A DNA stretch of 49,474 nucleotides, the filler included, from Bipalium vagum (taxonomy: Eukaryota), in assembly GCA_037834085.1 (NCBI GenBank). It is 2 parts of 2 records of this genome, joined end to end, with 100 filler letters (N's around TTAATTAATTAA, not from the genome) between each part and the next. Parts side by side here need not be neighbours in the genome. Positions count along the whole stretch, not along the records: positions 1 to 28,189 come from JBBMKC010065432.1; 1 more part is not named here. One strand, written 5' to 3'. Position 1 is the stretch's first letter. Each line of letters opens with the position of its first letter. Under the pieces are notes generated by a model. That model was not told where the DNA came from, did no database searches, and saw only the letters and a list, made by a program, of their open reading frames with translations. A program made the translations under genes and the position numbers. This document shows, one piece after another, positions 1-25,781 of this stretch.

Positions 1-139
1 CGAGCTCAATAGTTAAGCCCATAGCAACCTTAGTTAAGGTCAGATACGCTAGGGGGCAGGTTTGCGCCAACAATTTTGATAATACAGACGATTCCATGTG
101 TAGTGGAACATTCTATGCACCATTAGTAATAATGAACAA

Positions 140-420
140 TCCATCGATAATGTAATTTCTGTTATTATTTGGGACCACCTTTCCACCGGCTCATCGAAAC
201 CTTTGTTCCAGAAATCTCTAGATCTGCGCAGAAAGAAATTGGTCAAGCCTTTCTCACAAGTAATAGCTTTCATTTGGTTGGGCTGCGAACGGAGAAGATA
301 CAAATCTGTTCGTCCACGATCTGGGGAAAACGCAGGTTGTTGCAGAACCCCAATCGAGCTCTTGGAGAGGGTTTTAACGCCATTTTCGGATTTCGGCTTA
401 GCGTTATCACTGAGATGAAT
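140..420 (-). mobile_element. Decayed mariner transposase C-terminal fragment
   Basis: Minus-strand translation GVLQQPAFSPDRGRTDLYLLRSQPNQ...TNFFLRRSRDFWNKGFDEPVERWSQII matches the mariner C-terminal pattern (HPPYSPDLAPSDYHLFRS...FF..K..DF...GI..L.ERW). Boundaries approximate. Confidence 0.75.
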
Positions 421-1018
421 GACTTTGGGTGATCTATCATGACTTTTCTCTTTTAAAATGTCGTTTATTCGTCCAGTAGAAACTGATAAACGAGAAATAT
501 GACCTCAAATCGGCTCTCTAGTTCAGCCGACCTCACCAGTTGAATATTTGTTCTGGGTACCCTTCAGGCAATGGTTTTCCATTACCAAAAATGAAACATC
601 TACTTAAAATGGAAAGATAAAGAATGTTCGCGTTTTAGTACCGAAGAGCTGCACACTGCAATATTGGTCTTCCCACGAAGAATTGAAATAATGTTATCCG
701 TTAAAGGAGATCAGTTTGAGAACATAATGTAGGGAAAACAGTTGTATTCCACATAATCCGTTTGTTTCTTATCATTAATAATATCATTATTTTGTCATTG
801 TTATTTCTCGTTGACTTTTCCCCTCGGATTTGATACAGTCTCAAAATAAGAAACAATGCTCTCCTTGACCCAATAATTAAAGTTATGATTTTAAAAGTAA
901 CCATCCCAATGGTCTCAGTACTCTGCCTAAACATTTCCCACAATTACAAATTGTCTTAATATTTACGAATGTCTTACGATGTCGGCATATATTGTTATTA
1001 ATACTTTTTATTAATAAT

Positions 1019-1023
1019 ATTTA

Positions 1024-1060
<37 letters not shown>
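1019..1060. repeat. (TAT)n microsatellite
   Basis: Visible trinucleotide run. Confidence 0.9.
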
Positions 1061-1063
<3 letters not shown>

Positions 1064-2502
1064 CATTATGATAATAATTATCTTTAAAACGGAATGCCAA
1101 TCAGAGTGTCCCGTAACAGAGGCCATGTCCATAGCAACTTACAGGGCTATCCAGAAGAGGATTTTGTGCGCCTTGACCCACAACGTTACTGGTTCGCTAA
1201 TTGAGAAAGGAGAAAATATAAATAAATAATAACAATCGCCTGTATTAAAACAACGTTCCTACTAAAATAAAATTATTGCCATCAAACCGAGTGTCATCAA
1301 CATTTGCACGCTTAAAATCCCATAGACCTTTCTGATAAAAGCTGAATGAAAAAAGAGTTTCTTAACCGGTATCATGGCAACGTCAAACACATACCTAATC
1401 GAATGGACTTTGAGGAAAAAATGAAATTTGTTCCCCCTGAAGGATGATGCAAAGAGGAATGTGAACCTGAACGAAAGTGAAATTAATTAAAGGACGTTAA
1501 TCAAAATTAATTAAATGTCCTCCTTATTTCACACGAGAATTAAAGATGAAAACATTCATGTTCAAACAGATATACTATTTTTAACCAGAAGTCTTTAATA
1601 ACAAGATGCAGCAATCTGATTGGTGGCGTGAATTAGTTAAGTTACATTTATTCGCGGTTTTATTTGTGGGTTTATTTTTAGTATCAGATAATGTCAAGGT
1701 CAGTGGTGGAATCACTGAAACGAAACGGGCAGCAAAATTTGATCAATAATAAAAAATTATAATCCTTCAGTTAAGGGGCGTAAAATATTTCAAAGTATCA
1801 AAAATTTCTGACACAATCGAGGAGTGAATCAACTAATGGACTAGAGGCATTCCATCAATATTCTGAGATTGTTAACAATTACACCCAAATCTCCATTTCC
1901 TTTTAATGAGTTGCTGATATAATTTTATTGTTTCTTTTCTTAATCTGTCGAGCTGATGACCAGATTTAACAACGTTAGGGTTTTAGTGCTATATAGGATA
2001 ACCTAGCATCATGACGATATTTTCTCCGCGAGTAACCACAATGCCAGAATTGATTTCTGATTTGTCTTTTGAATTAAGGTTCATAGGATAAAGTTGATGT
2101 TTGACTGATTTCTGAGTCTTATTTTGAAAACCATTCTCCGTCAAAGAATCTACACTAAAAGCTGCCAATATCTTATTTTTTGGTTGAGTAGAATTTCCCC
2201 CAGAACATTTAGAGGTGTCTGTTCTGTAAATTAACAGTTTTATTTTATATGAGACTGCTTTTCAGTATTTTGCTTAATCACAGGGTTGTCCATAGTAGTC
2301 AGAATACCAAAGGATATTTTTTTACTTACCAAATGCTTTCCGAAAATTTTCCTTTTCAATTGATAACCTCTCTCACTTTTCGAAATAAAGACCTCTGAAT
2401 TGCCAAAATTCATTTCTTTCCTTCACTTCAACGAATGAATACAGACTTTGGAAACTTACAGTCAAACCAATGACAAATTCAGTGATCTCCTTTTATGAAG
2501 TA

Positions 2503-3240
2503 TATCATCGAACTTCTATATTGGACCACCACATTTGAAAAGTGGTCTGGAACCAGAAGTTGGCACAAAGTACCAGAAACATTATTCGACGTTGACAGAT
2601 AAAAAAACCATAAAACCGTGTTTGGGTACTTATAAAGTGCCTTAGTAGAAAACATCTAAAATAAAACAACGATAGGTCCAATCAATAATGAGTGATATAT
2701 CTCACCGTTTTTGAATCAAATAATTCGTACTTTTTGTTTTATTCCATGTTCTTTTCGTAAATCCATCATGAACTTACTTTTAAAGCAATGAGACAGTTTT
2801 ACATTTTGCGACAGATACGGCTTCGTGAGTTCACCCAAACTGAAAAGATGTTAAAGCGTCAATGATATCGGGTATCTTTTCAGAATCCTCGATATATGAG
2901 TACGACTTCACCATTTTATCTTATTGAAGCAGTGCAGGTTCTCTGTCCAATATCTGATCAGTAGATTCTTTTAGATCAGCGACAGCTTCCACTTTCTTTA
3001 CCAATGATAATCTTTGACAAAACGATTTGTTCAACATGTTTTAGTGGAATCCTATGAAATTGACAATATCATCTTTTTCTTAATGCTATTGTTTCGTCAT
3101 TCTTGATTGTGAAAAATCTCAAATACCAAAATGTTATATTAAGGATTTTATTTTTATATGAAATTATCGAGAAATATGATAATAACAAATTAATGGTGCA
3201 AATGTAGAAGTTGGTCCGATTATAGAAGTGGCCCAAATCA
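2503..3240 (-). mobile_element. Decayed pogo/Tigger-like element
   Basis: Inverted-repeat pair AACTTCTATATTGGACCA (~2511) / TGGTCCGATTATAGAAGT (~3212). Minus-strand remnant MLNKSFCQRLSLVKKVEAVADLKE...PDIIDAL resembles the pogo/Tigger N-terminal HTH region. Frames are broken. Confidence 0.5.
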
Positions 3241-3277
3241 GAAAATGGCTCATAAATGAGTCATAATATGAGGTTAC

Positions 3278-6200
3278 CTACGAAGTTGAGGTTTTGAAAA
3301 TCTGTAAGCGGAAGTTCAAGATATCATATTGCTAGTAGTGTTAAAATGGTGTGTTACGACCAAGACCAAAATCTTAATGTTGAATATCGAATGAACCCAA
3401 TTTGGTTTCGATCTTTTTCAATTTTATAAATATTGAATATCGAACATTGAATATCGGCGTAATACTTCATTTTAACACTACTTACAGTTTTTTTTCATTG
3501 ACTTTTCATCTCAATTTTTTATTTTTTAATTATTATTTTTGATTTTTTTATAAATTCGAATTTTGTGAATTTCATGATTTATGATTGTAAAACATTACCC
3601 ATCAATCTATCTTTTTTTTTAAATGGATGAAAAATATTTTTGTGAAGTTTGTAAAACATATCAAACTATAACAAGAGTAAACATTTAAATACAAACATAC
3701 ATTTTAAAAATAGTACTAATAAAAATACTCTATCACTAATGAAAACATTAATCTAAGTACTAATGAAAAAATAAAAGAAAAATATCAAAATTTTTCTAAA
3801 AAACAGGGGTGATTAAAGATTTGGGGCTATTCACAATCAGCTATTCTAGATAATAAATTTTTTTAAAAAATTTACAACAGGAAAATATCCAGGAGAATTA
3901 CATTTAAAATCCTTAAACCCTATTAATAAAAAATGCTGTGCACCAATTTACCAGAACAGGATCAAATAATATTAAACTTTTAGAAAATAATAGAAAAGTT
4001 TTAGGAAATCCAATTTTTTTTCTAATTCCAAAAACTTATTCAATACCAATAAACAGAACAGAAACGATATTTTTCTAAATTTTTTTCAAATCATGATTTT
4101 AAATTTACTTGAATTGTTCTGTGAATATGGAATTGATACAACATCAAATTTATGAAAAATTAAACTTACTGTTTGTTGGTATTCTTATTGGAAATCTTGA
4201 ACGAAAAATATTATACAATCTGAAAACTTAAAAATCAATTTAACCAAGTTATCATTTAATAGAGAATTTACAATAATATTGATTGTACATGAAAATGAGT
4301 ACACAATCAATGATGCTATAAATTTTAGAACAGCAAATAAGTATCCTATTTTTGATTGATATAATATTTATAGGAACTATTTTATAGTTGATGAAGACCT
4401 TTACTGAAAATTTTTGTTAAAAGTTATAAAGGAACGGATATAATATTTAAAGGATATTTTAATTCATATTTTTATTATAATTCTGAAGGAAAATATTCAA
4501 GTAAATGTAGAGAAATCAGTGGGAATATTAATTTATGAAATTATACTTTTTTATCGTTAATTAAAAAATGATGAATTAATAGAAATAGAAATTTTTATTA
4601 AATCTTTTTGTAAAAATTTATTTTACAATTTAAAGTTCTCAAGATTTTTCAATATTTTATTATAAAAATTAAAAGATTCAACGACGTTGTCAAGGCCTTT
4701 GTTCAAAAATTTTTTAGATTATGCTATAAAAGATAATGATGAAAAACAAAACGACGTTTATGGAACATCTTCAATGTGTAAATCAGCTGTCCTATTTACC
4801 CAAAATTAGAAATTGACATATTCTCAAATCAATTATTGAGAAATTAGAAAAAATAAAAATGGAAAATTTTATGAATGAAAAAAAATGTTGAAGATTTATA
4901 AAAACATTTTGAAAAATTTAAATATACTTTTGTAGATTCTCATTTAAAATTAGAAAATATTTTTATTGGAGGACTTTTACGAATTGGAACTTCTATTATG
5001 ATAGTAATACCAACTTTTGGAACCAATTTATTAATTTATGTTCCTGCTGCAACATCAATTTTTGGACCTGTAAATTTATTTATTGGAGAAACAATTAGTA
5101 TAGGAATTACTTTTCAAAAGAAAAAGATATATCGGGAAAATGGGGCTACAATAGAATCATCATTTAATAAACTTTATATATTTCAATTAAAAGCATTAGA
5201 ACATAAAATATTATAAAATTATTACATAAAATATATGTAATGAAGAAATTGAACAAACGAAAATAATTCTTAATGAATGTAAAGAAAATATTACAAAAAT
5301 AAAATCAGGAAATATTATTAAAAATCAAAATGAAGAAATTAAAAAGGATTTAAAACGAAGTTCTCATGATGCAATAGCAGAATGCAAACGCAATTTTCTC
5401 CATGCGGGAGAAGAATTGAAATAGTTGAAAACCGATTATAATGCAATAAGCTCATACAGATCTAGCAAAGCTGTCAAGGTCTTCGACCGATCCAACACAG
5501 TAGTCAAAGCTTTTATGCGATCCCGCTGATTCGATAAATTTTAAAAAATAGATGTGAAAAAAGTACTAAGAGGCTTAGCCTACAAAAAACAAAATTCAAT
5601 TGATCTTAAAAAATGACTTGAAAATTTAAAAAATTAATAGGAACAAAAAATTAATTTGACACTAATCAATTAATTCAATAGAAAACAGAAAGAGGATTTA
5701 AGATTTAACATATTTTCATTAACCACTTACTGGTCCTCTAAGAAATTAATATAAATGATAAAGCTAATAAGAAAAATATAATAGATGGACCACATAGTGG
5801 TTGGAAGATTCACAATAGGTTTAAGTGTACAAACTACTTCACTATTTTTAACTTTTGATTTATATACTTCTTTATAAACACCAACCAATTACTGGAACAT
5901 TAATAATAAATGAAATCCGATTTTTGGTTATTAAAGAAGATTGAAAAGCATTTTTAAAATATAATAATCCAAAAGATCCTAAATCGAATGATGAAACATT
6001 TTTTGAATCAACTGAAAATTTAAAATTAATAATAGAAGGAATTTTAATCTAAATAGAGACACGATATTTAAAGTAGAAGATTTGAGTAATTATCTTCAAA
6101 TAATAAAATTATCAAAATCTAGTTTATTTATATTAAATTTCGACAAATTTTAAAATAAACATTTACATCGAATCTCAGTTAAATTACCGGATTTCCCCGA

Positions 6201-9200
6201 AAATCCGCTCCTGGGTTATTTTTGCAAAATTAACCTTGTTTAAGAAAGAAATTATTCCAAAGTATTTACATTAAAAATATAAAAATCTAATAAAAATTAA
6301 ATATAAAATTAAACAAGATTGACAAGAATATAACATTTATAAACCGAAATATTTAGCTCTTCAATTTGTAAATTTAAGAAAATAAAAAGGTGGTCATGAT
6401 AATGTTCATCATTTAATTTTAATAGATTTAAATAAGTTAAAAAAATAAAAAGCATATTCTGATTAAAATATTTTCTTTCTAAAAATGGAAGATTCTCTAC
6501 AAAAAATATCAAATCTTTTATCTCAAATATTTTCAACTTCATTTTAAAAATAGATAAAATAAATATTCTAATTATAAATGGAAACAAAACTTCCTATTGA
6601 AATGTGTAAAACGGCTGTAAATCTTAATAAAAAATGTTTCCTTGTCTTACAATCTTGTATTCAAAATGACTAAGAAAATCATGTTTTTGAAAAATTCCAT
6701 TTTTCTACTATTGAAAAATTTTTTTTTTAATTTTTTTTTGAGGAAACATGTGTTTTAACATATTCTTCCATGTATTTAAATATAAACTAATTTAAAGTAA
6801 TTATAATTATATATTTTCATCATTTTATGTATATTACAGGGGTGGCTCCAAAGATATAGACGACATCGTATATTACATTTAGAAAAGAATTTATTTGATC
6901 CCTCTGAAAAAAAAATAAACAGAAGACTAAGTAGCTATGATAAAAATAATTGTGGAAATTATTATTTCAATGAAATAAAGAATTATCTAAATTTAATTAA
7001 ATATGTCAATGGTTGTTTTAAAGCTAAAAATTTTGAAAATATTAAAACACGATATGATAAGTACAATAAAAAATACAGTATGGGAAGTGTTATAGATTTT
7101 ATAAACCAAAATATATACTTGATCAATTTAAATCTTTAATAAAATATTTGTGTGCTAAAAAAGCTGGTGGACGATAATGTTGATTATTTAATTTTAAAAA
7201 TTTCAAAAAAATAAAAAAGAATCAGTAATGAAATTATTTGAAAATGTTAAAGTTAGATTTGATCTAGATTCTGATTTAAATATTTTATTTTATTTTTCAA
7301 AGCAATGAAAGAATTTCTACAAAAAATATGAAATTTTTTATCTCAAAAATTTTCAACAACATTTTTTGTAGAAAGTTAAGAGAAACCTATAACCACTAAA
7401 TCTTGATCCAAATTTTAACTATAAGTTAGCTTTAATTTATTTTTCAACTTATAATTTTAAATATGTTTAATTTTAATGAAAAATAACAGAATAGATGTAA
7501 CTGTTACAAATTCTAAAGGAAATAAAGAATCTCGTAAGATAAAGATAACTCTAGGAACATATGAAGTTTCTGATATATCTGCATATATTTAGAATGGATT
7601 TAAAAGTATAAAAGAATTTGAACCATTAAAATCAGAAGAGTTTATGTAAAAATTAATTATAATCCAATTTCTTCAAACAGTGTAATGAAAATATCTAAAG
7701 GTTGTATTCTTTCTTTTCCAGAAAATTCAATTGGTGAATTAAAAAAAAATCTTATAAAGAAGGTTATTATGAATCAAAATTAGTAAACATTTCAAAGATA
7801 AATAAAATCATGATTGATTGAAAAATTTAGAATGAGGATTTTATAATGATAGAAGAACAAATATTATTTTTGATTTTCTTTTGAATGCTGTTCCAAGAAG
7901 ATAGAGAATCATTGATAGACCAAAATTCCCAATTTAACATCTTTTAATTACAAAAGAAAAATTTAATAAAGTTTAATGGAGAAGACATCAGTTTTACTAC
8001 TTATTTGAAGCAGACTAAACCTGCTGTCAACAAAGCTTGTTAAGCAAAAAACAATGAAAAAAAATTCTAACACTAACTAAAACATAAATTTATTGCATAA
8101 GATAAATATTAATTTATATTATTTCCGTTAAATATTATCATTTTAGGTATGCTGTACCAAAAATTGCTGTACAAATCAATAATAATTAATTGTTTGTGAA
8201 TATGTTGACCTATTCATGCTTCACTTTAGGTTGATAACCACCATACAGAATGTCTGAAATTATTTTCCAAACATTTTCTATAATATTCAAATCTGGTGAT
8301 GTTCATGGCCAATTCAGGACTTGAAAAGATTGTGTTTTCGAATATAATTGAAATCGTTTTGAAACATGGATTGGATAATTATCCGGAATCACATGACAGC
8401 CTTCATGACAATCGAGATTGATAATGGGTACATCGAAGTCTTTGAAAAGACTAATGTATTTTTCAATGTCTTTTTTTCCTTCCAATATTTTGACAGCAAG
8501 TAGACCGTTTGGCACAGTCATATCCCACACCATAATTCCTCCACCTTGATATTGACGTTTTTGACATGGAGATGTTTCCCCCTTCTTAACATACGAAAGT
8601 ATCATATATCATAAAAGTCTTTAAAATATCAATAATTATTTAATACCTGTTGTCAGTTCGTCAAGACTGAATCTTTTTTCATCAATATTTGACATCAATA
8701 TATTTTATTCCAAACAATATTCTGTCTAATCCACTGTAAAACCAAACGATTTCTTTTCAATTTATGTTTATTAGAAAGCATAATTTTCTGTGCAACCTTT
8801 TGATACGCATCTCATTCTTCAGCATCCATTTATTTAGTGGACACATCTATATTGGTTAACTGCAATACTTTGTTGCATGCAGTCTTATGATAATTATCAG
8901 TCTCTTTTTGATATAGGTCTTCTGTGGTTAAGATCATCAATCTTCCTTATATTCCTTTTTGGTTCTCGCTCTGCTTGTGAGTTTTTAATTTGTATGTTAA
9001 AATAGTTTTAATTGCATTCTTTTTCATATAAAAATCTACGATTCACTTAATGAACATTTGTATATGACAATATTTCTTAATTCCTTTGAATATATACCTA
9101 AAATTTTATTTAAAACTATAAGTAAAAATTTACTTACTGTCAGAAAAATTTTTTCCAATAATATTTTATAAAATTTAAGAAATTACATTTGTGATATATT

Positions 9201-9278
9201 ATTTAAACAAGTCTTCAAAATGTAGATATATAACAAGTTTCTAATGAGCAAACGAAAACAATAAATATTAACAAGTTT

Positions 9279-9309
<31 letters not shown>

Positions 9310-12300
9310 CTTTTATCTACCACCTTTTATCTCAGAAATTACAAGTGTCAGAAAAATAGTTTCCATCAGTATATGATATTTTTAAAAAAAGAATTATTTA
9401 TCTATGATAGTTTAATATATCTATTTCCATGTACACTGAAAATTGCGCCTAGTATTTCTTTTTCAATTAATAATAAATGATCACATGTATCTTTTTTAAA
9501 ATATTTTAATTTTACATTTGAAAATTTTAATCCTATATTTCATATTTAACCTGGAACTGAATGACAAGGAATCTCTACCTTGAATGGCAAATTGAAAATT
9601 AACAAAAAATCATGAAAAAAAATGAAAACAGTAAAAATCAAATTGGATTGACATTTGGAAAATAAAAATTAATAAAATGAAAATCAATGAAAAAATCAAT
9701 AATCAATGAAAAAATGTGATAGTAGTGTTAAAATGAAGCGTTACTCTGGTGTTCGATATTCATAAAATTAAAAAAATCAAAATCAAATTGTGTTTTTCCG
9801 ATATTCGCTATTCGACGTTGGGGTTTGTGTCTTGGTGGTAACACCCCATTTTAACACTACGATGGCTTTACCTTACAACTCTGTTACTCGTAATGTTAGT
9901 TGAAGTTGTCTTTGGTATGGAAACTAAAGCTTTTAATTCAAACGATAGCCTTACTTTGTTGGGTCGTGTGGGGACCGTACTGTGCATCTGTAGAGAAAAT
10001 ATATTAAAATTTTATTAATTTCATTATGGTCTTCACTTGGCTGTTGAGGACCATACATCGGGTAGGATGCATCTTTGAAAGAGCGTCAAATATACATTAA
10101 TAAATATCATTTTTACTGAGATGCTGAGGTCCGTAAGCTCCGAGCGGAACATCTTGAAAGAAGTGATCAATAAATAATTGTTAATTGTCTTTACTTTGGT
10201 TCTGAGGACCGTAAGGACTGTTAAAGGCATCTTTAAAGAAAATATTAAAGCGAAACATCAACTATATCTTCTGACTTGGTTGCTGAGGTCCGTAAAAGCC
10301 TTCGGAGGTTCGTCTCAGAAAAGATTAATACTCATTTCATATTTAATCTACCTTGGCCTTCTTGTTGCTGTCCTGTTTATTAAAAAAACTGAGTTAAGCT
10401 TTATAAATTTTATTAATAATTAAATTTGATTAATTCCTCGTTGAGTCTGAGCTCCGAATTGAGTTTGTAACTTTAAAATTGCTTTACTGACAACCTCTGT
10501 CATTACAACTGAGCAGCCTCTCATTACAATTATATTATTTCATTCTGTCAGCGCGTATGGGACATTCCTTATTCAAGGGTAATAGACCGTTATCCTGCTG
10601 GGCATCCGGCAAATTTCGCAAAAAACATTTACGTCGCATCTCAGTTAAATGACCGGATTTCCCCCGAAAAAAGCCCCGGGATTATTTTTGCAAATTCAAC
10701 CTTTCCAAAAATAAACTCGGTTGAAAATCAGCCCCGGTTTATTTCTGAGAATATTTCATAAAAGAATTGCTTTCAACAAATATCTCCAAATTTTTAGGTA
10801 TTTTACATTTTGATGGATTTTTTAAACCTTTAAATATAACCAATGTTTTGGAAAATGTACCAGCGAATGATATGGTTACAGCCACAGTAAATCTCGTTTT
10901 TTCATCACCTGTGGTACGAAGATCGGTATTCTGTTCTCCTTTAACAGAAATGGTGCTCCATCTCATCATATCTGCATAGGTCGCCATTTCGTCCATATTA
11001 AAAAAAATTTCTGCCTCTTTCTTTTAAAAAAATTTTTAAAATTAATTTAATCTATCAAAAAATATTGATAAAACAATTTTATCTTAAAGCGAAAAACTTT
11101 AAAAAAATAAGCCTTGGTCCTATTTTCGAGTGGGATTATTTTCGGGGAAATCCGTAAGCAAAAATATAAACGAACTTTTAAATGTAATGTAATTATTACT
11201 CCGGTAAATAAGGTAATTATAATTACATGAAAATAAAAGCATTAAAATAGGTAATTAAAACAAGTGGCGCCTAAAGGAAGTTATAATTCATTTATCTATA
11301 TCATTTAATTCGGAAATCCGACTCTGAAAATTAATACTTTTAATTTGATATCCACGACGATCAGTTGAATTGACAACGATTTATTAATTTTATCACACTA
11401 TAACACATAAAAGCAAGTTTTCTTCGATTTGATTGGTTTCTCATATTCTCAACTGTTTTTTCCTGTCTCAGCTTCGGCTTCTGTTTTTGATTTTGTAATT
11501 TTCTTTTTATTTACTCCATTATTACCAATTGATCTTCTATCACCCAATGATGTTAATGTAATATTTTCTTGTTGATATAAATAAATGTTATCGCTATCTG
11601 ATTTCATATAATTGTATTGTGTCATCCTGAAATTCCTGTGAATTTTGGCCAAGAAAATTTAAGAAAAAGTTCTAATATTTTCTTGGTCTTGCACGGTCAT
11701 CATTTTCAAAGCTGAAGTTGCCACTCTTAGATTTTTGAAAATGTCTTTTTGTTTATCTTTCACTTACAAAACTATCGCCCACGGCGAAGTAAATATTTCT
11801 GGTTGCTTCTCATGCATTATGAAGTGTTCATGAAGAATGCAAATTCAAATACGTTCAACTATGCCCTGGAACAAATAACGTCTCATTTAAATCGAACTGC
11901 CTACCTAAAGAAGAATATGGAAAAGCCAAATTGGCGCTTCAGTGTGACATATTAAAACAATTATTATCATAAAACTGATTGATTAACAAATCTTTGAAAT
12001 GATAAAGCTGAAATCCGTCATTCTCTTTGGGCCAGCCGATAATTCAATGCTCAATAATGAAACACGGAGAGAGCAATGGGAAAGTGACGACTGGACGATG
12101 AAGATTTCATAGATTATTAGGGGGTCTGGTCAGATCTCCACCTGCTCTCACATCTCAAAACATTTCTTAATAAGCTGTGACTTCAGAGGAGTTATTTCAA
12201 AAGCCTTACCCAAATCACTTTATACAGTAATAATGAAAGGTGAAGTGTATCGATCTTAAGGGATGTAATACTGAATAATAAGATTTTTTAAACATTGGCG

Positions 12301-12673
12301 TGTTGATTGTTTCAGAGGCCGTCGTCTTACCTTGATACTGGGCACCGTATGGTAAGGGTCCCTGATCTGAAGATAGAAGGCAATAAAATCGACCAAAACG
12401 CCGACGTCCTTACATTGTTGCGGAGATCCGTACTGGTAATCTGGAAACATGAAAATGAGACTGGTAATCAGATAAAACATTCAACAAACATTGATAAGCG
12501 GGCTGGTCTTGTCGGGGTTGTCGAAAAAAGAGTATTAGAAGCGAGAACCGGTTTCAAAATGAACCTACTGTTGCTTTCATTCTCGTTCGGGTTTGGGCCT
12601 GCACAAGGGGACACAATCAACGATCCACATAATTAAGATCAAAGGCAAAATCCTTCTTACGTGACAGTTCCAT
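3278..12673 (-). CDS. Micro-exon gene encoding a low-complexity YGPQ-repeat protein (3' end unresolved)
   Basis: Predicted coding exons (minus): 12673-12661 (ATG in CCATGG), 12598-12569, 12507-12490, 12440-12414, 12366-12331, 10470-10437, 10372-10352, 10313-10276, 10230-10195, 10152-10117, 10072-10037, 9987-9955, 9923-9872, 3301-3278. Probable 5'UTR exon 12785-12741. All acceptors are AG; all donors are GT except one GA (10436). The spliced frame is open: MELSRPNPNENESNNQPAYQYYQYGSPQQYQGPLPYGAQYQVTNSIRSSDSTRTATRRPRRTSEGFYGPQQPNAFNSPYGPQNQNVPLGAYGPQHLNASYPMYGPQQPNAQYGPHTTQQISIPKTTSTNITSNRVVRFSKPQLR. The repeat core varies mainly at third codon positions. The join between the 12.3-12.7 kb and 9.9-10.5 kb exon clusters is inferred from phase and composition. 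Confidence 0.75.
4900..5320 (+). pseudogene. Decayed hydrophobic/coiled-coil ORF inside the Maverick
   Basis: ORF 4998-5216: hydrophobic stretch followed by ...ESSFNKLYIFQLKALEHKI, continuing in a shifted frame as EEIEQTKIILNECKENITKIK. Resembles by eye an accessory ORF of invertebrate Mavericks; assignment is pattern-level only. Confidence 0.35.
7480..8018 (+). pseudogene. Maverick minor capsid (penton)-like gene remnant
   Basis: Broken frames read KIKITLGTYEVSDISAYI ... EGYYESKLVNISKINKIMID ... GFYNDRRTNIIFDFLLNAVP ... IIDRPKFPI ... FNGEDISFTTYLKQT*, following the motif order of Polinton minor capsid proteins. Multiple stops and frameshifts. Confidence 0.65.
8100..9372 (-). mobile_element. 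Tc1-like (DD34E) element nested in the Maverick, decayed
   Basis: ORF 8303-8605 GGGIMVW...VIPDNYPIHVSK...VLNWP, continuing past a stop as TSPDLNIIENVWKII, gives the Tc1 QDN.P.H and WP..SPDLNPIEN.W motifs. Confidence 0.8.
10653..11154 (-). mobile_element. Internally deleted pogo-family element in an intron of the micro-exon gene
   Basis: TIRs CCGGATTTCCCCCGAAAA / TTTTCGGGGAAATCCG-TA. ORF 10739-10996 (N)MDE...KGEQNTDLRTTGDEKTRFTVAVTISFAG...LVIFKG is the pogo DDE_1 signature. Confidence 0.85.
11490..11650 (-). pseudogene. Possible Maverick protein-primed DNA polymerase B C-terminal remnant
   Basis: MKSDSDNIYLYQQENITLTSLGDRRSIGNNGVN resembles the pPolB C-terminal pattern (RS..H.IY....K..LS..DDKR.I...G.T). 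Short, pattern-level match. Confidence 0.4.
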
Positions 12674-13084
12674 GGAGCCAACTGTCCCTGAACACGCTTG
12701 TCGAAGAACAGGTGCTACCTTTCCAAGCAGAGTTCCTTACCTTTGAAGATCCTTTCTCTGGCTCACTTTGCACTGCGATCGACGTCTGCATGAAAATCAC
12801 GAAAGGAAACACCTCCTACCTTCAAATCTCGTCGTTATGAGTTGACAGATTGATAATAACAAATCGATTGATCAATCGATAAATCAATTAATTTATTGAT
12901 TATATTTAATTATCCTCAAACAATNNNNNNNNNNNNNNNNNNNNNNNNNNNNNNNNNNNNNNNNNNNNNNNNNNNNNNNNNNNNNNNNNNNNNNNNNNNN
13001 NNNNNNNNNNNNNNNNNNNNNNNNNNNNNNNNNNNNNNNNNNNNNNNNNNNNNNNNNNNNNNNNNNNNNATATTAATAAAAAAA

Positions 13085-14398: not shown

Positions 14399-16321
14399 AT
14401 GTTTGCAACCCTGCCGAAGATCAGTGATCCGGACACTCATGAAAGATTTGGAGTCGGAGTGCTCCTGGGAACGGTAAGCAAGCTTTGATTTGTGCTTGGT
14501 AGGACGGTGCTGACGGTCTTGTTTTTCGATAGGGAACCTTTGCTAACTGCTACGAGCTCTTTGACAGCAACAACAAGCTCTTTGCTCTGAAGAGAGTAGC
14601 CAAACAGAAATTGTTGAAAAACCCCTTACTCCTGCGCCAGCTCAAAGATGAGATCGCCATTCACCGGACCCTGGACCACGAGAACATTGTCAAGTTCCAC
14701 AGCAATTTCGAAGACAAGTACTTCTTCTACATGATTCTGGAGATCTGCATGCAAAAGGTTTGTCATGAGGCATTGGATTTGAAAGGTTTACCATCATTTT
14801 TCCCTTCAGTCGCTGAGGGAGCTGAAGCAGTGTCGGTTCAAGATCACGGAGCCCGAGACCAGATACTTCTGCCGCCAGTTGATTTTGGCGTGCGACTACC
14901 TTCACATGAGAAGGATCATCCACCGAGACCTGAAGCTGGAGAACGTCTTTCTCAATTCCGAAATGGTCGTCAAGCTCGGAGATTTTGGACTGGCAGCTCA
15001 ACTGACGTCCGACCACGATCGACGGCGAACGTTTTGCGGAACGCCAAATTATGTCGCTCCTCATGTGCTGGCGAAGAAAAGTTACAGCTTTGAGGCCGAC
15101 ACGTGGTCGCTGGGGGTGATAGTGTAAGTTTTTTGCTTTTGATTCCGACAAAATTGACTGTCCATAGGTTCGTACTGCTCACAGGATCGTACCCCTTCGT
15201 TGCTGATTCCTTGTCGGAAATGTACAGCCAAATAAAGAAAGCGCAGTACGTTATCCCCGACGAGGTGGGTCATTCGGCTCAGGAAGTCATTCGGTCACTG
15301 CTTCAGATCACCAATATCCCCACCATGAAATCGTTGCTGGAAATGCCATTCTTCAAAGAGTACACTCCAAACGTGTTACCCACCTCAGTTTTGTCGAGTG
15401 CCCCTCGTTTTGACAGCATCCTGACCCCTGAGCCCGTTAAAATGGAAACGAGAACTTTCTACTCCGAAGCTGGTATGGCCTCCGAATATTGCTTCAGTGG
15501 TTACAAGAACGATACCGATAAGAGGAACGGTCTCACCAATGACTTGCTGGTGCAGCTTCGAAAGCTGCTGACAAATGTCGCGGTGTTGGAAGATCTGCCG
15601 TCACAAATCTCCAGACAGAAGTGGCACGAGACTGTGCAGGACCGTGCTTTGACCCCCGTGTTTTGGATCACCAAGTGGCTGGACTACTCTCTCAAGATGG
15701 GCTTTGGGTACCAACTGAACGACTCCTCGGCCGGGGTGGAGTTCCTGGACAAGTCCCGCCTGATTGTGACGACCAACGACGATAACATTCAGTACATCGA
15801 TCCGGACGGTTGCGAGGCGCTGTACACTCGCCTAAATTTCCCCAATCAACTGTTACAGAAGCTGGAGTTCCACTCCTACTTCAAAAGGTATATGTCGGAG
15901 AAGCTGCAGACAGTAAGGGTTTTCTTGGTACTAACAAACTGATTCCTGTTTTCTAAGGTCGGCAAAGACGTCAGCAACTCAGAAAAGGATTCCATGGTCC
16001 GTCTGCCATTCCTGTTATCGTGGCAGAGGAACGAGAAGGCCATCATTTTACTGTTGAACAGCGGCACGACGCAGGTGAGTGATTTCTTTTCTTGTCAGAA
16101 CAATACCATGACACAACATCCTCCTCGTTCAGATCAATTTCTTCAGTGACCACGTCAAGGTCATCTTCTGTCCCCATATGAGGTCCGTGACCATTGTTGA
16201 TGAAAAAAAGGATTTCAAAACGTACGCCTTTTCCAAGCTTTACCAAAGTGGAATGACAAGATCACTGAAGAGCCGCATCGAAAAGTGCATGGAGGTGATG
16301 GAGAACTGGGTGAAGAATTAG
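14399..16321 (+). CDS. plk: Polo-like kinase (PLK1-type: kinase domain + two polo boxes), ~554 aa, 6 coding exons
   Basis: Exons 14399-14473, 14533-14757, 14810-15123, 15168-15912, 15958-16074, 16133-16321 (1665 nt, open frame). GT-AG introns of 59, 52, 44, 45 and 58 nt. Motifs LGTGTFANC, FALK, HRDLKLEN, DFGLA, RRTFCGTPNY; polo box 1 WITKWLDYSLKMGFGYQL; polo box 2 QINFFSDHVKVI. AATAAA at ~16470. A possible acceptor (cacag, 14375) leaves room for an extra upstream exon. Confidence 0.93.
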
Positions 16322-22791: not shown

Positions 22792-25781
22792 TTATCCTTG
22801 CATCTGTTGAACGAAGCCCTCAATGACATTCTTCAGTCCAATTGCAGTGGGTCGGTCGTCTGGGATTGGTTTGAGACACATGGCGATAACATCTCCCACG
22901 ACAGTATGGCACTCACTTGGAAACTCATAATCAATGCACATCTCGTGTCGAAGTATATTTTTAATTCTGGAGGTGCTTTTCCCGTTAAAAGGAGGCTCGC
23001 CTGAAAGGAAAACGAGCAAAATATCATCTACCCAAAGACATGTGAATAGTGACATGAATCGATCAAGAAAACTACCACCGGGAACGTACCTGTGACCATT
23101 TCGATCAAAGTTGCTCCAAAAGACCAAGTATCGGCTTTATTTCCATATTTCTCCTTCCGCAAAACTTCCGGTGCCGCCCAATTGATGCATTCGCTTTTGG
23201 AGCCTTTCTCCCCTACGAGACACTTGTTTTTGTCGTACAAATATTTCGAAAACTCGAAATCGGTCAGCTTGGCATTGTCATTGGCATCTAGTAGAATGTT
23301 GGAACCTGAAAGAGAAGACAGGCGCATGTTGAAACCAAGTAAAAATCTCAAAGTACAAGACACGAGCTTTGTGTACAAAATCAATAGACGACTACTGCGA
23401 CACGGAGCCAACAAAGTAAATGCACGAAATTCCGAAATGCAGTTTGCGTGGTGCACGAACGAATTTAAGATCACTGAAGCAATTTAAACAAGCAATTATT
23501 TGAAATTCGTTTTGAAGGTCATTGAGAAAGATATTTTGCCTCATCGAGTGAGGACCGTGTCTGGACGACAGCTTGAACTCGACAGATGACGTTTTGAAGC
23601 AGTATTTGAATGAAGATGTCAAATCTTTTCCCCTTTACCAGCAATACAACGATGGCAAACCTGCTTGCTTGACTAAGAGAAGCTGGTAGACCATCGATTT
23701 TAAGCAATGAACAGCTTAGTTAATTGATGACAAGGAAGCGCGTGAAAAAATCGGACGAGCCAATCGATTTCTTGGTGGTAAATGTCAGACTTCTAAAGAA
23801 ACCGTGCGTCAAATATTGTGAAAATGTGCAGTAAATCATCACAAAAGAGTTCAAGATTAAAGGGTACAGCGATGAGCAATCGGATTTGATGCCGGAAAAC
23901 TGATGGTGCTTTCGAAGAGATTCCTTACTTCGGAGGTTAAGATTATTTGGGAAGATGGAAAATATTTCACTTTTGCCTGGAGTAATGCTTCATAACATAA
24001 AGTATATCGTGCTGATGACAATGAAAGCGTTCCATTTCTGAAAAGGGGTGTTTCAGTGGTACATACAAGAATAGAGCAGCTTATAATTAGAGACGCCTTA
24101 GGGATTTGAAAAAGATTGTTCCACATTGTCGAAAAGTAAAGAGGCTAAAACTATTTTCCGGGCTGCCTTTACAAGGCACCATGAGTCAAATGAAACATTA
24201 CAAAGAGATGGTTCGACGATATTAACATCCCATTTGTACAAGGAGCAGTGGGTCCCTCAAACATTCCCAAGGCTCATCCATTGGAGACTTTTTACCTCGA
24301 TCGTGTACATATTAAGGGCTGGGAAGCCACAGTCCACAACCACCTCACAACGAAAATTCGAGAAATCGATATGGAGATTGTCAAAACGATGATTCCCGGC
24401 GTGAAAAGAAGATTCGTAAAATCAAAGAAGAAAATAACAATATTATCTTGAGACATGTTAGAATAGGGTCCCTTCGTTTTTGATCATTCACTTCATTGGC
24501 AAACCCTAAACGGTTTCTGATAATCAATATTTCACAATGATAAATAATTAAAAATATTGGATCAATAACAAAAATTCTGGCTCGATTTAAAAAATAAAAC
24601 AACTTTATTCATTGGTCACATGATGATCATTCCTCTCTACAAGTGGTTTCCAACTTTCTACAAGCGGTTCGAACCCATATTGATAGAAATCTCCTGATTT
24701 TCCTGGGAAGAAGACCATAAAATAGACCATTCGACAGCTTCACCAGAATGGAACGTCTTACAACTCGAAACACAGTGCAGAGACAGGAAAAACGAATATC
24801 ACAGGTCAATTGTTCTTTTCACATTATCGTTCCAGTCTCAAAGTCCTCCTCACTGACGTATTTTCATATGGCAGAAAATTCGGCCGATGGATATTTGAAG
24901 AAAGACAAGAAAGTTTGTGTGGCGATGTTTCTGGAGATTCACGAAAGTCCTGTATGACCAGACCTGGTTCAATGGTAATTCTGGTGGGTTTTCCTGTCCT
25001 GTGGAAACAGAAAACAGATCCTGTTCACAAACGTATGGGTAAATGCTAATGATGACTTGTCCATTGATGGTGTTGTATGTCGTTCAGCTTTCCATTTCTG
25101 TCGACCCATTGACACAAACTTTGTGAGGTCGGACATTCTATCATTAAACCTCTCTCTCTCTCTCTTTTCAACTGTCAACATTCTGCACTACAGATTGTTT
25201 TTATAGAGAAAGGGGGGGGGGGGAGCGGGCGTTAACAAAAAATTAAAAACGTAGCAAAGAGATAAAAAACGAAGTCGTACACTTCATGTTGCGGAAAATT
25301 ATTTTCAGCTCGTGTAAATAGTCCAGCGCCTCCAAAATTGGAATGGAATAGCCGAAGATCTTGTCGACGTTTCTCACTGGGAGATGACTGCTTAGAGAGC
25401 CCTGAAAAATAGAGAAAGAGATGATCGGAAAATGAGAGATAAAATAAAAAAAGAAAGCAATAGGTTCCAGGACGGACAAAACTCCGACCTGTCCCCACAA
25501 CCGCTGCGTCACTCACCCTTTCCATGTATTGGAGGCCGATGTAGAAATAGGTATTCATAAACATTGCATTGTAATGTACGAATTGGGGCTTCTTCTCCGA
25601 ATGGATTTTGAAGAGCGTGACGATGTCGTACTTCAGAAATTTTAAATCGGTCTTATCGTTGTCCAAAATGTACTCCTTGAGGACGATATCTTCAATCTCT
25701 GTACCTTTGCGAAGAGTTCCCTTTAAAATCTTGGCAAAGCGACCCGCGTGAATCTTTTCACCAATCTGGATGTGATCCGAA
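22792..25781 (-). CDS. STE/MAP3K-like protein kinase-fold protein, predicted pseudokinase (5' start not found)
   Basis: Exons 25781-25517, 25401-25281, 23305-23090, 23000-22792. GT-AG introns of 115, 1975 and 89 nt. Open spliced frame of ~269 aa: IHAGRFAKILKG...IVLKEY...LQYMERGSL...LDYLHELKIIFRNMKCSNILLDANDNAKLTDFEFSK...[37 protein letters not shown]...PDDRPTA. The first exon begins in phase 2, so an upstream exon is required. Confidence 0.85.

What the first reader, a model, noticed from the sequence alone, without database searches (positions are those of the whole stretch)
9872..12785. Hidden micro-exon gene: a chain of 18-52 nt exons, mostly symmetric phase-1 cassettes, encoding a modular YGPQ-repeat protein
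Seen: on the minus strand, short GC-richer islands are bounded by AG acceptors and GT donors. Eight internal exons (30, 18, 27, 36, 36, 36, 36, 33 nt) are multiples of 3 and all phase 1-1, and the whole chain splices into one stop-free frame that the ORF track cannot see. The product is Q/Y/G/P/N-rich with no signal peptide or recognisable domain. Established: genes built from strings of symmetric micro-exons (schistosome MEGs) generate protein variants by exon skipping, and Tyr-Gly-Pro-Gln repeats occur in disordered or condensate-forming regions such as the synaptophysin tail. Inference: this is a lineage-specific, probably intracellular, combinatorially spliced low-complexity protein whose tyrosine-repeat number can be tuned by exon skipping. 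It is likely unannotated because gene finders miss such exons.
Basis: partly seen in the sequence, partly recalled or inferred. Interest (0 to 1): 0.9.

Follow-up and report, generated by a model that had tools for sequence, protein, structure and literature searches.

The report
Micro-exon tail of a Lifeguard gene
The chain of tiny exons is real, but it is most likely the disordered, tyrosine-rich front end of an ordinary Lifeguard/GRINA-type membrane protein whose membrane-spanning exons lie 8.5 kb downstream, and not a new stand-alone gene.

Summary
On the minus strand, 11 exons of 13-36 nt (12673-9955) have AG/GT borders. Every internal exon is a multiple of 3 and phase 1-1, and the chain reads as one open frame from an ATG. 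Five units are diverged tandem copies of an exon-plus-intron cassette encoding N-x5-YGPQ-xx. In the YGPQ core, all 4 variable sites are third codon positions, which points to selection on the protein.

Downstream on the same strand lie three exons of a Lifeguard (TMBIM/Bax1-I) gene: 1466-1395, 1341-1263 and 1196-1143. They read ...NFIFSSKSIRL-A-FIRKVYGILSVQ... The first has no ATG and a phase-1 acceptor, so it needs upstream phase-1 coding exons, and the micro-exon chain is the only credible supplier. The 8.5 kb between them is mostly transposon debris. The micro-exon peptide is 61% P/G/Q/Y, like the cytosolic N-terminal tail of human GRINA.

No RNA data exist for this organism, so the splicing, the link to the Lifeguard exons and any exon skipping are inferred. 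The gene runs off the contig end, and its 3' half may be damaged. Interest is moderate.

The parts
12661..12785 (-). 5' exon(s) with the start codon. The ATG is at 12673-12671 and the coding part is 12673-12661 (13 nt), with donor gtaaga and phase 1 out.
   Evidence: There is no ATG upstream in these exons, and an in-frame TAA lies upstream if the exon is unspliced.
12569..12598 (-). Micro-exon, 30 nt, phase 1-1 (PNPNENESN).
12490..12507 (-). Micro-exon, 18 nt, phase 1-1 (QPAYQ). It has the weakest splice sites of the chain (acceptor gacaag, donor gtttgt).
12414..12440 (-). Micro-exon, 27 nt, phase 1-1 (YQYGSPQQ).
12331..12366 (-). Micro-exon, 36 nt, phase 1-1 (QGPLPYGAQYQ).
10373..12330 (-). 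Intron of 1958 nt. It holds a small DNA transposon with 23-nt terminal inverted repeats (10654-11154) and high-copy repeats.
   Evidence: inverted repeat I1. (depth up to 3092 at 11931-12041).
10352..10372 (-). Micro-exon, 21 nt, phase 1-1 (QQQEGQ).
10276..10313 (-). First cassette of the tandem array. From the homologous acceptor (10313) it is 38 nt, with a 2-nt insertion that breaks the frame. From the inner acceptor (10299) it is 24 nt and in frame (FYGPQQP).
10195..10230 (-). Cassette exon, 36 nt, phase 1-1 (AFNSPYGPQNQ).
10117..10152 (-). Cassette exon, 36 nt, phase 1-1 (VPLGAYGPQHL).
10037..10072 (-). Cassette exon, 36 nt, phase 1-1 (ASYPMYGPQQP).
9955..9987 (-). Cassette exon, 33 nt, phase 1-1 (AQYGPHTTQQ), with a strong donor gtaagg.
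9872..9923 (-). From the homologous acceptor at 9910 it reads NNFN-stop. From 9923 it stays open but leaves phase 2. It is probably skipped, or it is an alternative terminal exon.
   Evidence: The preceding intron would be only 31 nt, against 42-62 nt for the other short introns.
1467..9954 (-). Inferred intron of 8.5 kb, mostly repeats. Inverted ~200-nt copies at 3335-3539 and 9659-9860 bound a nest of high-copy repeats. A DDE_3-like transposase fragment lies at 8303-8605 and another repeat at 2511-3200.
1395..1466 (-). Juxtamembrane exon of the Lifeguard gene, 72 nt, phase 1-1, with no ATG. It reads SHSSLHHPSGGTNFIFSSKSIRL followed by the split codon G|CT. An alternative acceptor at 1436 gives 42 nt, also phase 1.
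   Evidence: Paralogue L015 has the same ...SIRL G|gt phase-1 intron.
1263..1341 (-). Lifeguard TM1 exon, 79 nt, phase 1 in and phase 2 out: (A)FIRKVYGILSVQMLMTLGLMAIILF(Y).
   Evidence: Pfam Bax1-I PF01027 positions 2-25, E 0.0066. Paralogue L014 has a 79-nt exon with the same phases, and L013/L015 is 53% identical.
1143..1196 (-). Next Lifeguard exon, 54 nt, phase 2-2: (Y)EPVTLWVKAHKILFWIAL.
   Evidence: AG/GT borders and frame continuity were read directly. The resemblance to the TM1-TM2 loop of the family is from memory.
838..1013 (-). Uncertain continuation. A possible exon at 1013-968 reads (L)INNNICRHRKTF, but no clean TM3 follows. A high-copy repeat starts at about 837 and the contig ends at position 1 inside a mariner-like fragment.
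   Evidence: (562-837 is a repeat; no Pfam hit).

Best explanation
The micro-exon chain is the 5' coding part of a Lifeguard/GRINA-type TMBIM gene (Bax inhibitor-1-like, a family of multi-pass membrane proteins). Eleven tiny phase-1 exons encode about 104 residues of a hydrophilic N-terminal tail that is 61% P/G/Q/Y and predicted to be disordered and cytosolic. The tail continues through a 72-nt juxtamembrane exon (…NFIFSSKSIRL) into the first membrane-spanning exons (AFIRKVYGILSVQ…).

The tail was lengthened by tandem duplication of an ~80-nt exon-plus-intron cassette encoding N-x5-YGPQ-xx. Cassettes E7-E10 end in A and cassettes E8-E11 start with AT. Any join among them therefore keeps the frame and recreates an Asn codon, so units could be added, lost or skipped without harm.

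Shown: the exon anatomy, the phases, the cassette homology, third-position-only variation in the YGPQ core, and the Lifeguard identity of the downstream exons.

Inferred: that the two parts are spliced together across the 8.5-kb transposon-filled intron, that the tail is cytosolic and serves as a docking region as proposed for GRINA, and that the gene is still functional.
For: (1) The exon chain and its frame are confirmed.
(2) The sequence looks coding. The motif is enriched 5 against 0.11 expected, the cassettes align, and all 4 variable core sites are third codon positions.
(3) Downstream on the same strand, 1341-1263 hits Pfam Bax1-I positions 2-25. It has the same 79-nt length and phases as paralogue L014.
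(4) Exon 1466-1395 ends ...KSIRL with a phase-1 donor at the same codon as paralogue L015. L015's exon carries the ATG. Ours has none, has no in-frame ATG back to the preceding stop, and has a phase-1 acceptor. It must therefore receive a phase-1 coding exon from upstream.
(5) Scans of 9960-1380 found no other credible phase 1-1 exon. They found only AT-rich chance-like ATG exons.
(6) The 8.5 kb between the parts is largely repeats bounded by inverted copies, so the ancestral intron was about 1-2 kb.
[quoted passage not shown] Here P/G/Q/Y is 61% and the junction reads SKSIRLAFIRK.
(8) There is no signal peptide or hydrophobic segment in the tail.
Against: - There is no transcript evidence. 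The only public run is DNA.
- No homologue could be retrieved for any piece.
- Phase agreement alone has a 1 in 3 chance.
- A short AT-rich first exon (for example 1559-1535, MNVFIFNS) could give a short-tailed Lifeguard protein independent of the chain.
- The decayed sixth cassette offers a stop codon that could end a stand-alone protein.
- Only about 45 of the 207 Bax1-I profile positions are seen. The sequence after 1143 does not read as a clean TM2/TM3, and a repeat starts at 837. The gene may be disrupted, or its remainder may lie on another contig.
Confidence: 0.6

Rival explanations
1. It is a stand-alone small gene. The chain ends in the decayed sixth cassette (…TTQQNNFN-stop from acceptor 9910, or …ISIPKTTSTNITSNRVVR-stop by read-through of 9923-9869). 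That gives a soluble Y/G/P/Q-rich protein of about 110-125 residues. The Lifeguard gene downstream has its own short first exon.
For: - The intron 9954-9910 would be 45 nt, typical of this array, and its acceptor (ccaaag) resembles the other cassette acceptors.
- Candidate ATG exons with phase-1 donors exist upstream of 1466.
- The paralogue L015 is a short-tailed Lifeguard gene.
Against: - The candidate first exons near the Lifeguard part are AT-rich (24-32% GC) and look like chance.
- There is no AATAAA within about 370 nt after the putative stop.
- The sequence just beyond (9659-9860) is one arm of a repeat.
- It would be a coincidence for a P/G/Q/Y-rich coding array to sit directly upstream, on the same strand and in the same phase, of a family whose hallmark is such a tail.
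Confidence: 0.22
2. It is a decaying or already dead Lifeguard gene copy. The tail exons are still open, but the gene has been inactivated by transposon insertion in its membrane part, so the array is a relic and not a working tuning device.
For: - Both edge cassettes are degenerate, one by a 2-nt insertion and one by a stop.
- After 1143 the reading (L)INNNICRHRKTF… lacks a proper hydrophobic TM2 end and TM3, and has no Pfam hit.
- A high-copy repeat starts at 837 and a mariner-like fragment fills 52-504.
- Several other Lifeguard paralogues exist in the genome.
Against: - Eleven consecutive tiny exons keep their splice sites and frame.
- The third-position-only variation shows selection, at least until recently.
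- The missing exons may simply lie beyond the contig end in this very fragmented assembly of 272,664 contigs.
Confidence: 0.13
3. There is no gene on the minus strand. The GC-richer islands belong to the 109-codon plus-strand ORF at 12307-12636, or they are chance AG/GT patterns.
For: An open plus-strand frame of 109 codons overlaps the 5' cluster.
Against: - That ORF has no Pfam domain and no homologue.
- It cannot explain the 9.9-10.4 kb array, the motif enrichment, the conserved splice-site positions or the codon-position pattern.
Confidence: 0.03

Closest known systems
GRINA / TMBIM3 / Lifeguard 1 and the other long-tailed Lifeguard proteins (TMBIM1, FAIM2)
   Same: Both have a cytosolic N-terminal tail dominated by Pro, Gly, Gln and Tyr with regularly spaced tyrosines. 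In both, a juxtamembrane K-S-I-R-x-A-F-I-R-K motif follows, then the Bax1-I membrane domain. In both, the tail is encoded by its own exons, separate from the membrane part (PMC6719933).
   Different: Here the tail is cut into at least 11 symmetric exons of 13-36 nt made by tandem cassette duplication. Human GRINA uses two coding exons for its N-terminal region. Gln and Asn are more frequent here, and Pro less. Only the first ~45 profile positions of the membrane domain are in the contig, and subfamily assignment was not possible.
Schistosome micro-exon genes (MEGs)
   Same: Both have tandem strings of symmetric exons whose lengths are multiples of three (6-36 nt in MEGs), flanked by conventional exons. 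Such an arrangement permits variation by exon skipping (described in PMC4699917).
   Different: MEG products are secreted proteins with signal peptides and no conserved domain. This product has no signal peptide and appears to be the tail of a conserved intracellular membrane protein. Alternative splicing is unproven here, and there is no sequence relation.
Divergent Lifeguard genes SmDLFG1/2 of Schistosoma mansoni
   Same: These are Lifeguard-family genes that gene predictions missed and that were recognised only from transcripts (PMC4699917). They are a precedent for hidden Lifeguard genes.
   Different: The similarity is only in circumstance. No sequence comparison was possible, and those genes were found because RNA-seq existed.
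Tropoelastin-type cassette genes (from my own knowledge, not tested here)
   Same: A low-complexity, repetitive protein region is encoded by many small exons that all split codons in the same phase, so exons can be skipped in frame.
   Different: The protein is unrelated, it is extracellular, and the exons are larger.
Synaptophysin-type Y-G-P-Q C-terminal repeats
   Same: Both are Tyr-Gly-Pro-Gln-rich cytosolic low-complexity tails on a multi-pass membrane protein.
   Different: That tail is C-terminal and sits on a MARVEL-domain protein. No MARVEL exon is present here. The adjacent domain is Bax1-I.

Membership tests
Lifeguard / TMBIM (Pfam Bax1-I, PF01027) | Match to the Bax1-I profile over the whole seven-helix domain, at or above the curated cut-off | tested here: inconclusive
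   Only profile positions 2-25 match (16.7 bits against a cut-off of 34.1, E 0.0066). The own-genome scan with PF01027 did not list this contig. The rest of the domain lies off the contig or is damaged.
Lifeguard / TMBIM (Pfam Bax1-I, PF01027) | Family signature at the tail-to-TM1 junction (…SIRxxF[IL]RKVY…) | tested here: met
   The spliced reading is KSIRL-A-FIRKVYGILSVQ. Compare human GRINA DKSIRQAFIRK (PMC6719933) and own-genome paralogue L015 SIRLGFLRKVYGILSVQ.
Lifeguard / TMBIM (Pfam Bax1-I, PF01027) | Exon-intron positions shared with paralogues of the same genome | tested here: met
   The phase-1 intron after SIRL is shared with L015. The 79-nt TM1 exon, phase 1 in and phase 2 out, is shared with L014.
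GRINA-like long-tailed Lifeguard subgroup | Long cytosolic N-terminal region dominated by P, G, Q and Y, physically joined to the membrane domain | tested here: inconclusive
   The composition criterion is met: 61% P/G/Q/Y over 104 residues with no hydrophobic segment. The join rests on strand, order, phase and the lack of an ATG in exon 1466-1395. No transcript is available.
Schistosome-type micro-exon genes (MEGs) | Most of the coding sequence in symmetric micro-exons of 36 nt or less, in multiples of 3 | tested here: met
   This holds for the tail: ten internal exons of 18-36 nt, all phase 1-1. It does not hold for the membrane part (72, 79 and 54 nt).
Schistosome-type micro-exon genes (MEGs) | Signal peptide and secreted product without a conserved domain | tested here: not met
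   The N-terminus MELSRPNPNENES is hydrophilic, with maximum 19-residue hydropathy of -0.19. Bax1-I exons lie downstream.
Schistosome-type micro-exon genes (MEGs) | Protein variants produced by exon skipping | not testable with these tools
   No RNA run for this organism.
Synaptophysin/MARVEL proteins with a YGPQ tail | MARVEL four-helix domain next to the repeat | tested here: not met
   No MARVEL hit was found in any piece scanned. The neighbouring domain is Bax1-I.

The most novel reading that the evidence does not exclude
The cassette array is a working length-tuning device. Exon skipping among the interchangeable phase-1 cassettes (each join recreates Asn) would produce Lifeguard isoforms with different numbers of YGPQ tyrosine motifs in the cytosolic tail. 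A truncated soluble tail-only isoform could end in the sixth cassette. This would be a MEG-like combinatorial mechanism in a conserved intracellular membrane protein.
Probability: 0.15. Interest if true: 0.6.

Novelty: new variant of a known kind. Interest (0 to 1): 0.35.

Why it matters
If the join is confirmed, this shows how a disordered protein tail can grow by tandem duplication of a complete exon-plus-intron cassette. It also shows how such genes escape ORF-based and many model-based gene finders: the Lifeguard membrane exons would be annotated as a 5'-truncated gene and the tail would be missed. It gives a concrete, cheap RT-PCR test of whether symmetric micro-exon cassettes are used for isoform tuning outside the secreted schistosome MEGs. 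It does not reveal a new kind of protein. The family and the composition of its tail are known.

Tried and rejected
- RNA evidence: the look-up of sequencing runs returned a single DNA-like run. Laying it only confirmed the DNA sequence.
- Homology searches by reference all came back blank:
  - The TM1 exon piece against 1.8 billion representatives gave 0 hits. At 33 residues it is too short for that database size.
  - A paralogue piece searched with a region restriction gave nothing.
  - The antisense ORF gave nothing.
  - The neighbouring polo-kinase exon, tried in the hope of reaching syntenic loci in relatives, gave nothing.
- Search with the joined (spliced) peptide was left out. Single micro-exons of 6-12 residues are too short to search.
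- Direct join 9955 to 1341 was my first model. I dropped it when the 72-nt exon 1466-1395 was found.
- I first read window 943-830 as TM3-TM4 of the Lifeguard domain. I dropped that because 562-837 is a high-copy repeat and Pfam sees nothing there.
- Paralogue contigs (L001-L017) were inspected for similar cassette arrays or tail exons. None were found, and the array is unique in the genome.
- A tblastn of paralogue pieces against the window gave only low-complexity noise.
- Tandem Repeats Finder does not see the array because the cassettes are too diverged.
- Rfam found nothing in the window.
- The organism could not be identified with the tools at hand.
Full report
**Setting.** The piece (window 1-28189) is one whole contig, C65432, of a very fragmented 440-Mb assembly with 272,664 contigs. 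It is AT-rich, 20-40% GC per kb, and comes from a eukaryote with very short introns. The organism could not be identified. Other genes in the piece are a polo-like kinase on the plus strand (kinase and POLO-box hits at 14.6-15.9 kb) and a protein kinase on the minus strand at 22.8-23.5 kb. Rfam finds nothing.

**Check of the observation.** The start exon has its ATG at 12673, ends at 12661 and leaves phase 1. It is followed by exons of 30, 18, 27 and 36 nt at 12598-12331, and then by exons of 21, 24, 36, 36, 36 and 33 nt at 10372-9955. Each is bounded by AG and GT, and each is a multiple of three entered and left in phase 1. Short introns are 42-62 nt, and one intron of 1958 nt separates the two clusters.

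The translation of the chain, with the junction codon to the next exon, is MELSRPNPNENESNNQPAYQYYQYGSPQQYQGPLPYGAQYQGQQQEGQGFYGPQQPNAFNSPYGPQNQNVPLGAYGPQHLNASYPMYGPQQPNAQYGPHTTQQS. Of these 104 residues, 61% are P, G, Q or Y and a further 11% are N. No window of 19 residues in the first 110 is hydrophobic (maximum -0.19), so there is no signal peptide or membrane segment.

**Is it more than chance?** Four results say it is.
- The DNA motif for Y-G-P-Q/H (TAYGGNCCNCA) occurs five times in the window, all on the minus strand between 9969 and 10294, against 0.11 expected.
- The five units starting at 10313, 10230, 10152, 10072 and 9987, and more distantly those at 12366 and 12440, align as copies of one exon-plus-intron cassette: AG|AT…TACGGNCCTCAG…CAA|GTAAG (alignment A1).
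- Across the five units, the 12-nt YGPQ core varies at all four third codon positions and at none of the eight first or second positions. For four variable sites placed at random the chance is 1 in 495. This is the signature of selection on the encoded peptide in exactly the predicted frame.
- An independent Logan assembly of the only public run that holds this DNA covers 9600-12924 at single-copy depth (about 17-30) with no differences in the exons. The 2-nt insertion noted below is therefore not an assembly error.

The array is unique in the genome.

**Corrections to the chain.**
- The cassette at 10313 has a 2-nt insertion relative to its sisters. From its homologous acceptor it is 38 nt and breaks the frame. 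Only the inner, weaker acceptor at 10299 (24 nt) keeps it.
This stretch is a decayed sixth cassette. Its homologous acceptor at 9910 gives an intron of 45 nt but reads NNFN-stop.
- The split of the 5' exon into 12785-12741 and 12718-12661 would need a 22-nt intron, so it is more likely one exon. Either way, the ATG at 12673 is the first in-frame start.

**What lies downstream.** The decisive lead came from the minus strand near the contig end. The ORF piece 1265-1390 reads …FIRKVYGILSVQMLMTLGLMAIILF and hits Pfam Bax1-I (PF01027) at profile positions 2-25 (E 0.0066). This is the start of the membrane domain of the Lifeguard/TMBIM family.

Splice sites define three exons here:
- 1341-1263 is 79 nt, entered in phase 1 and left in phase 2.
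- 1196-1143 is 54 nt and reads (Y)EPVTLWVKAHKILFWIAL.
- 1466-1395 is 72 nt and lies just upstream. A search for phase-1 donors preceded by [ILVM]-R-x found it. It reads SHSSLHHPSGGTNFIFSSKSIRL, and its final G joins CT of the next exon.

The spliced junction is therefore …FSSKSIRL-A-FIRKVYGILSVQ…. Human GRINA has DKSIRQAFIRK at the same place (PMC6719933).

Two paralogues in the same genome share these intron positions:
- L015 (contig C80128) has …SIRL G|gt…ag|GA TTT TTG AGG AAA, the same phase-1 intron.
- L014 (contig C151366) has a 79-nt TM1 exon with the same phases.

**The link between the two parts.** In L015 the exon ending in SIRL carries the start codon. The equivalent exon here, 1466-1395, has no ATG, has no in-frame ATG back to the preceding stop, and has a phase-1 acceptor. 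It must therefore be preceded by coding exons that end in phase 1.
- A scan of 9960-1380 for phase 1-1 exons with reasonable acceptors, donors and GC found only this exon and one hit inside a repeat.
- A scan for ATG-initiated exons with phase-1 donors near the Lifeguard part found only AT-rich, chance-like candidates, for example 1559-1535 MNVFIFNS at 24% GC.
- The micro-exon chain supplies an ATG, eleven phase-1 donors, and a peptide with the composition typical of the long N-terminal tails of this family. [quoted passage not shown]
- The 8.5 kb between 9955 and 1466 is not a barrier. Windows 3335-3539 and 9659-9860 are inverted copies of each other and bound a nest of high-copy repeats. Window 2511-3200 is another repeat family, and a DDE_3-like transposase fragment lies at 8303-8605. 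Without these insertions the intron would be 1-2 kb, like the 1958-nt intron inside the chain. That intron itself holds a small transposon with 23-nt terminal inverted repeats at 10654-11154.

**Mechanism proposed.** The gene encodes a Lifeguard/GRINA-type multi-pass membrane protein. Its cytosolic N-terminal tail is a low-complexity, tyrosine-studded region of about 128 residues. The tail grew by tandem duplication of an ~80-nt cassette of a 36-nt exon plus a ~44-nt intron. Cassettes E7-E10 end in A and cassettes E8-E11 begin with AT, so every join, including any join created by skipping, recreates an Asn codon and keeps the frame. This makes gain, loss and skipping of units neutral to the reading frame. 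The degenerate cassettes at both edges of the array (10313 and 9909) fit ongoing birth and death of units. That the tail serves as a docking region for SH3-type or similar partners is taken from what has been proposed for GRINA. It is inference, not a result obtained here.

**What is not shown.** There is no transcript evidence of any kind. The only run found is DNA. No homologue of any piece could be retrieved. The splicing of the micro-exons, the join to the Lifeguard exons and any alternative splicing are therefore inferred from sequence anatomy.

The 3' half of the gene is also unresolved. After 1143 a possible exon reads (L)INNNICRHRKTF, which resembles the TM2-loop region of paralogue L017 (…IIIIGCFTQPRRTFPLN). 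No clean TM3 follows. A high-copy repeat starts at 837, and the contig ends in a mariner-like fragment at 52-504 that has no Pfam hit; the mariner reading rests on a resemblance recalled from memory. Either the remaining exons lie on another contig or the gene has been damaged.

**Rivals.**
- A stand-alone small Y/G/P/Q protein ending in the sixth cassette remains possible (about 0.2).
- A relic of a dying Lifeguard copy is possible (about 0.13).
- The antisense 109-codon ORF at 12307-12636 has no domain and no homologues, and it cannot explain the array.

**Comparison with known things.**
- As a protein, this is a new member of the Lifeguard family with a GRINA-like tail.
- As a gene structure, it resembles schistosome micro-exon genes in its symmetric exons of 36 nt or less. 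It fails their defining features of a signal peptide and a secreted, domain-less product.
- It also recalls cassette-exon genes such as tropoelastin (my own knowledge, not tested).
- I know of no description of a Lifeguard tail built from such cassettes. Two literature searches found none, but that is weak evidence of novelty.

**Verdict.** Novelty is a new variant of a known kind, and interest is moderate (0.35).

Noticed in passing
window 14611-15942 (+): A polo-like kinase gene, with a protein kinase piece and a POLO box (E 5e-10). It lies head-to-head with the micro-exon gene across the N gap at 12925-13069, so the two may share a promoter region.
   Followed up: partly
window 22792-23474 (-): Two overlapping ORF pieces of a protein kinase domain (PK_Tyr_Ser-Thr / Pkinase, E 5e-17), which are exons of another gene.
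   Followed up: no
window 10654-11154: A small DNA transposon inside the 1958-nt intron. It has 23-nt terminal inverted repeats (83% complementary) around an 85-codon ORF remnant at 10742-10996 with no clear Pfam match. Logan depth there is 3-8 times single copy.
   Followed up: partly
window 3335-3539 and 9659-9860: Inverted copies of ~200 nt (72% identical) bound a 6.5-kb nest of high-copy repeats (thousands of candidate matches in the genome). This is either one large element with long terminal inverted repeats or two copies of one element.
   Followed up: partly
window 52-504 (-) and 8303-8605 (-): Tc1/mariner-type transposase fragments. The first fills the contig end and probably caused the assembly break. 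It has no Pfam hit and was read as mariner-like only from a resemblance recalled from memory. The second has a weak DDE_3 hit (E 0.022).
   Followed up: partly
window 11931-12041: A very high-copy short repeat inside the intron, with summed Logan contig depth about 3092 against about 17-27 nearby.
   Followed up: no
L001 (C188906), L004/L005 (C254581), L006 (C200540): Two or three closely similar copies of Bax inhibitor-1 (TMBIM6) sit on separate contigs. For example, KEVQKHLKDVYSTLAIGIIAAAVGAYLH is matched by …TLALGIIAAAVGAYLH. They may be haplotigs, recent duplicates or mixed genomes. There are also a GHITM/TMBIM5 gene (L002) and at least four other Lifeguard-type C-terminal exons (L003, L007, L008, L010).
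   Followed up: partly
window 12307-12636 (+): A 109-codon open frame antisense to the 5' micro-exon cluster, with no Pfam domain and no homologue. It is probably a by-product of the GC-richer coding sequence on the other strand.
   Followed up: yes
window 1010-1100: An (AAT)n-type microsatellite with 10% GC, inside the intron after exon 1196-1143. Similar runs sit in introns of the paralogues (L015 end, L017).
   Followed up: no
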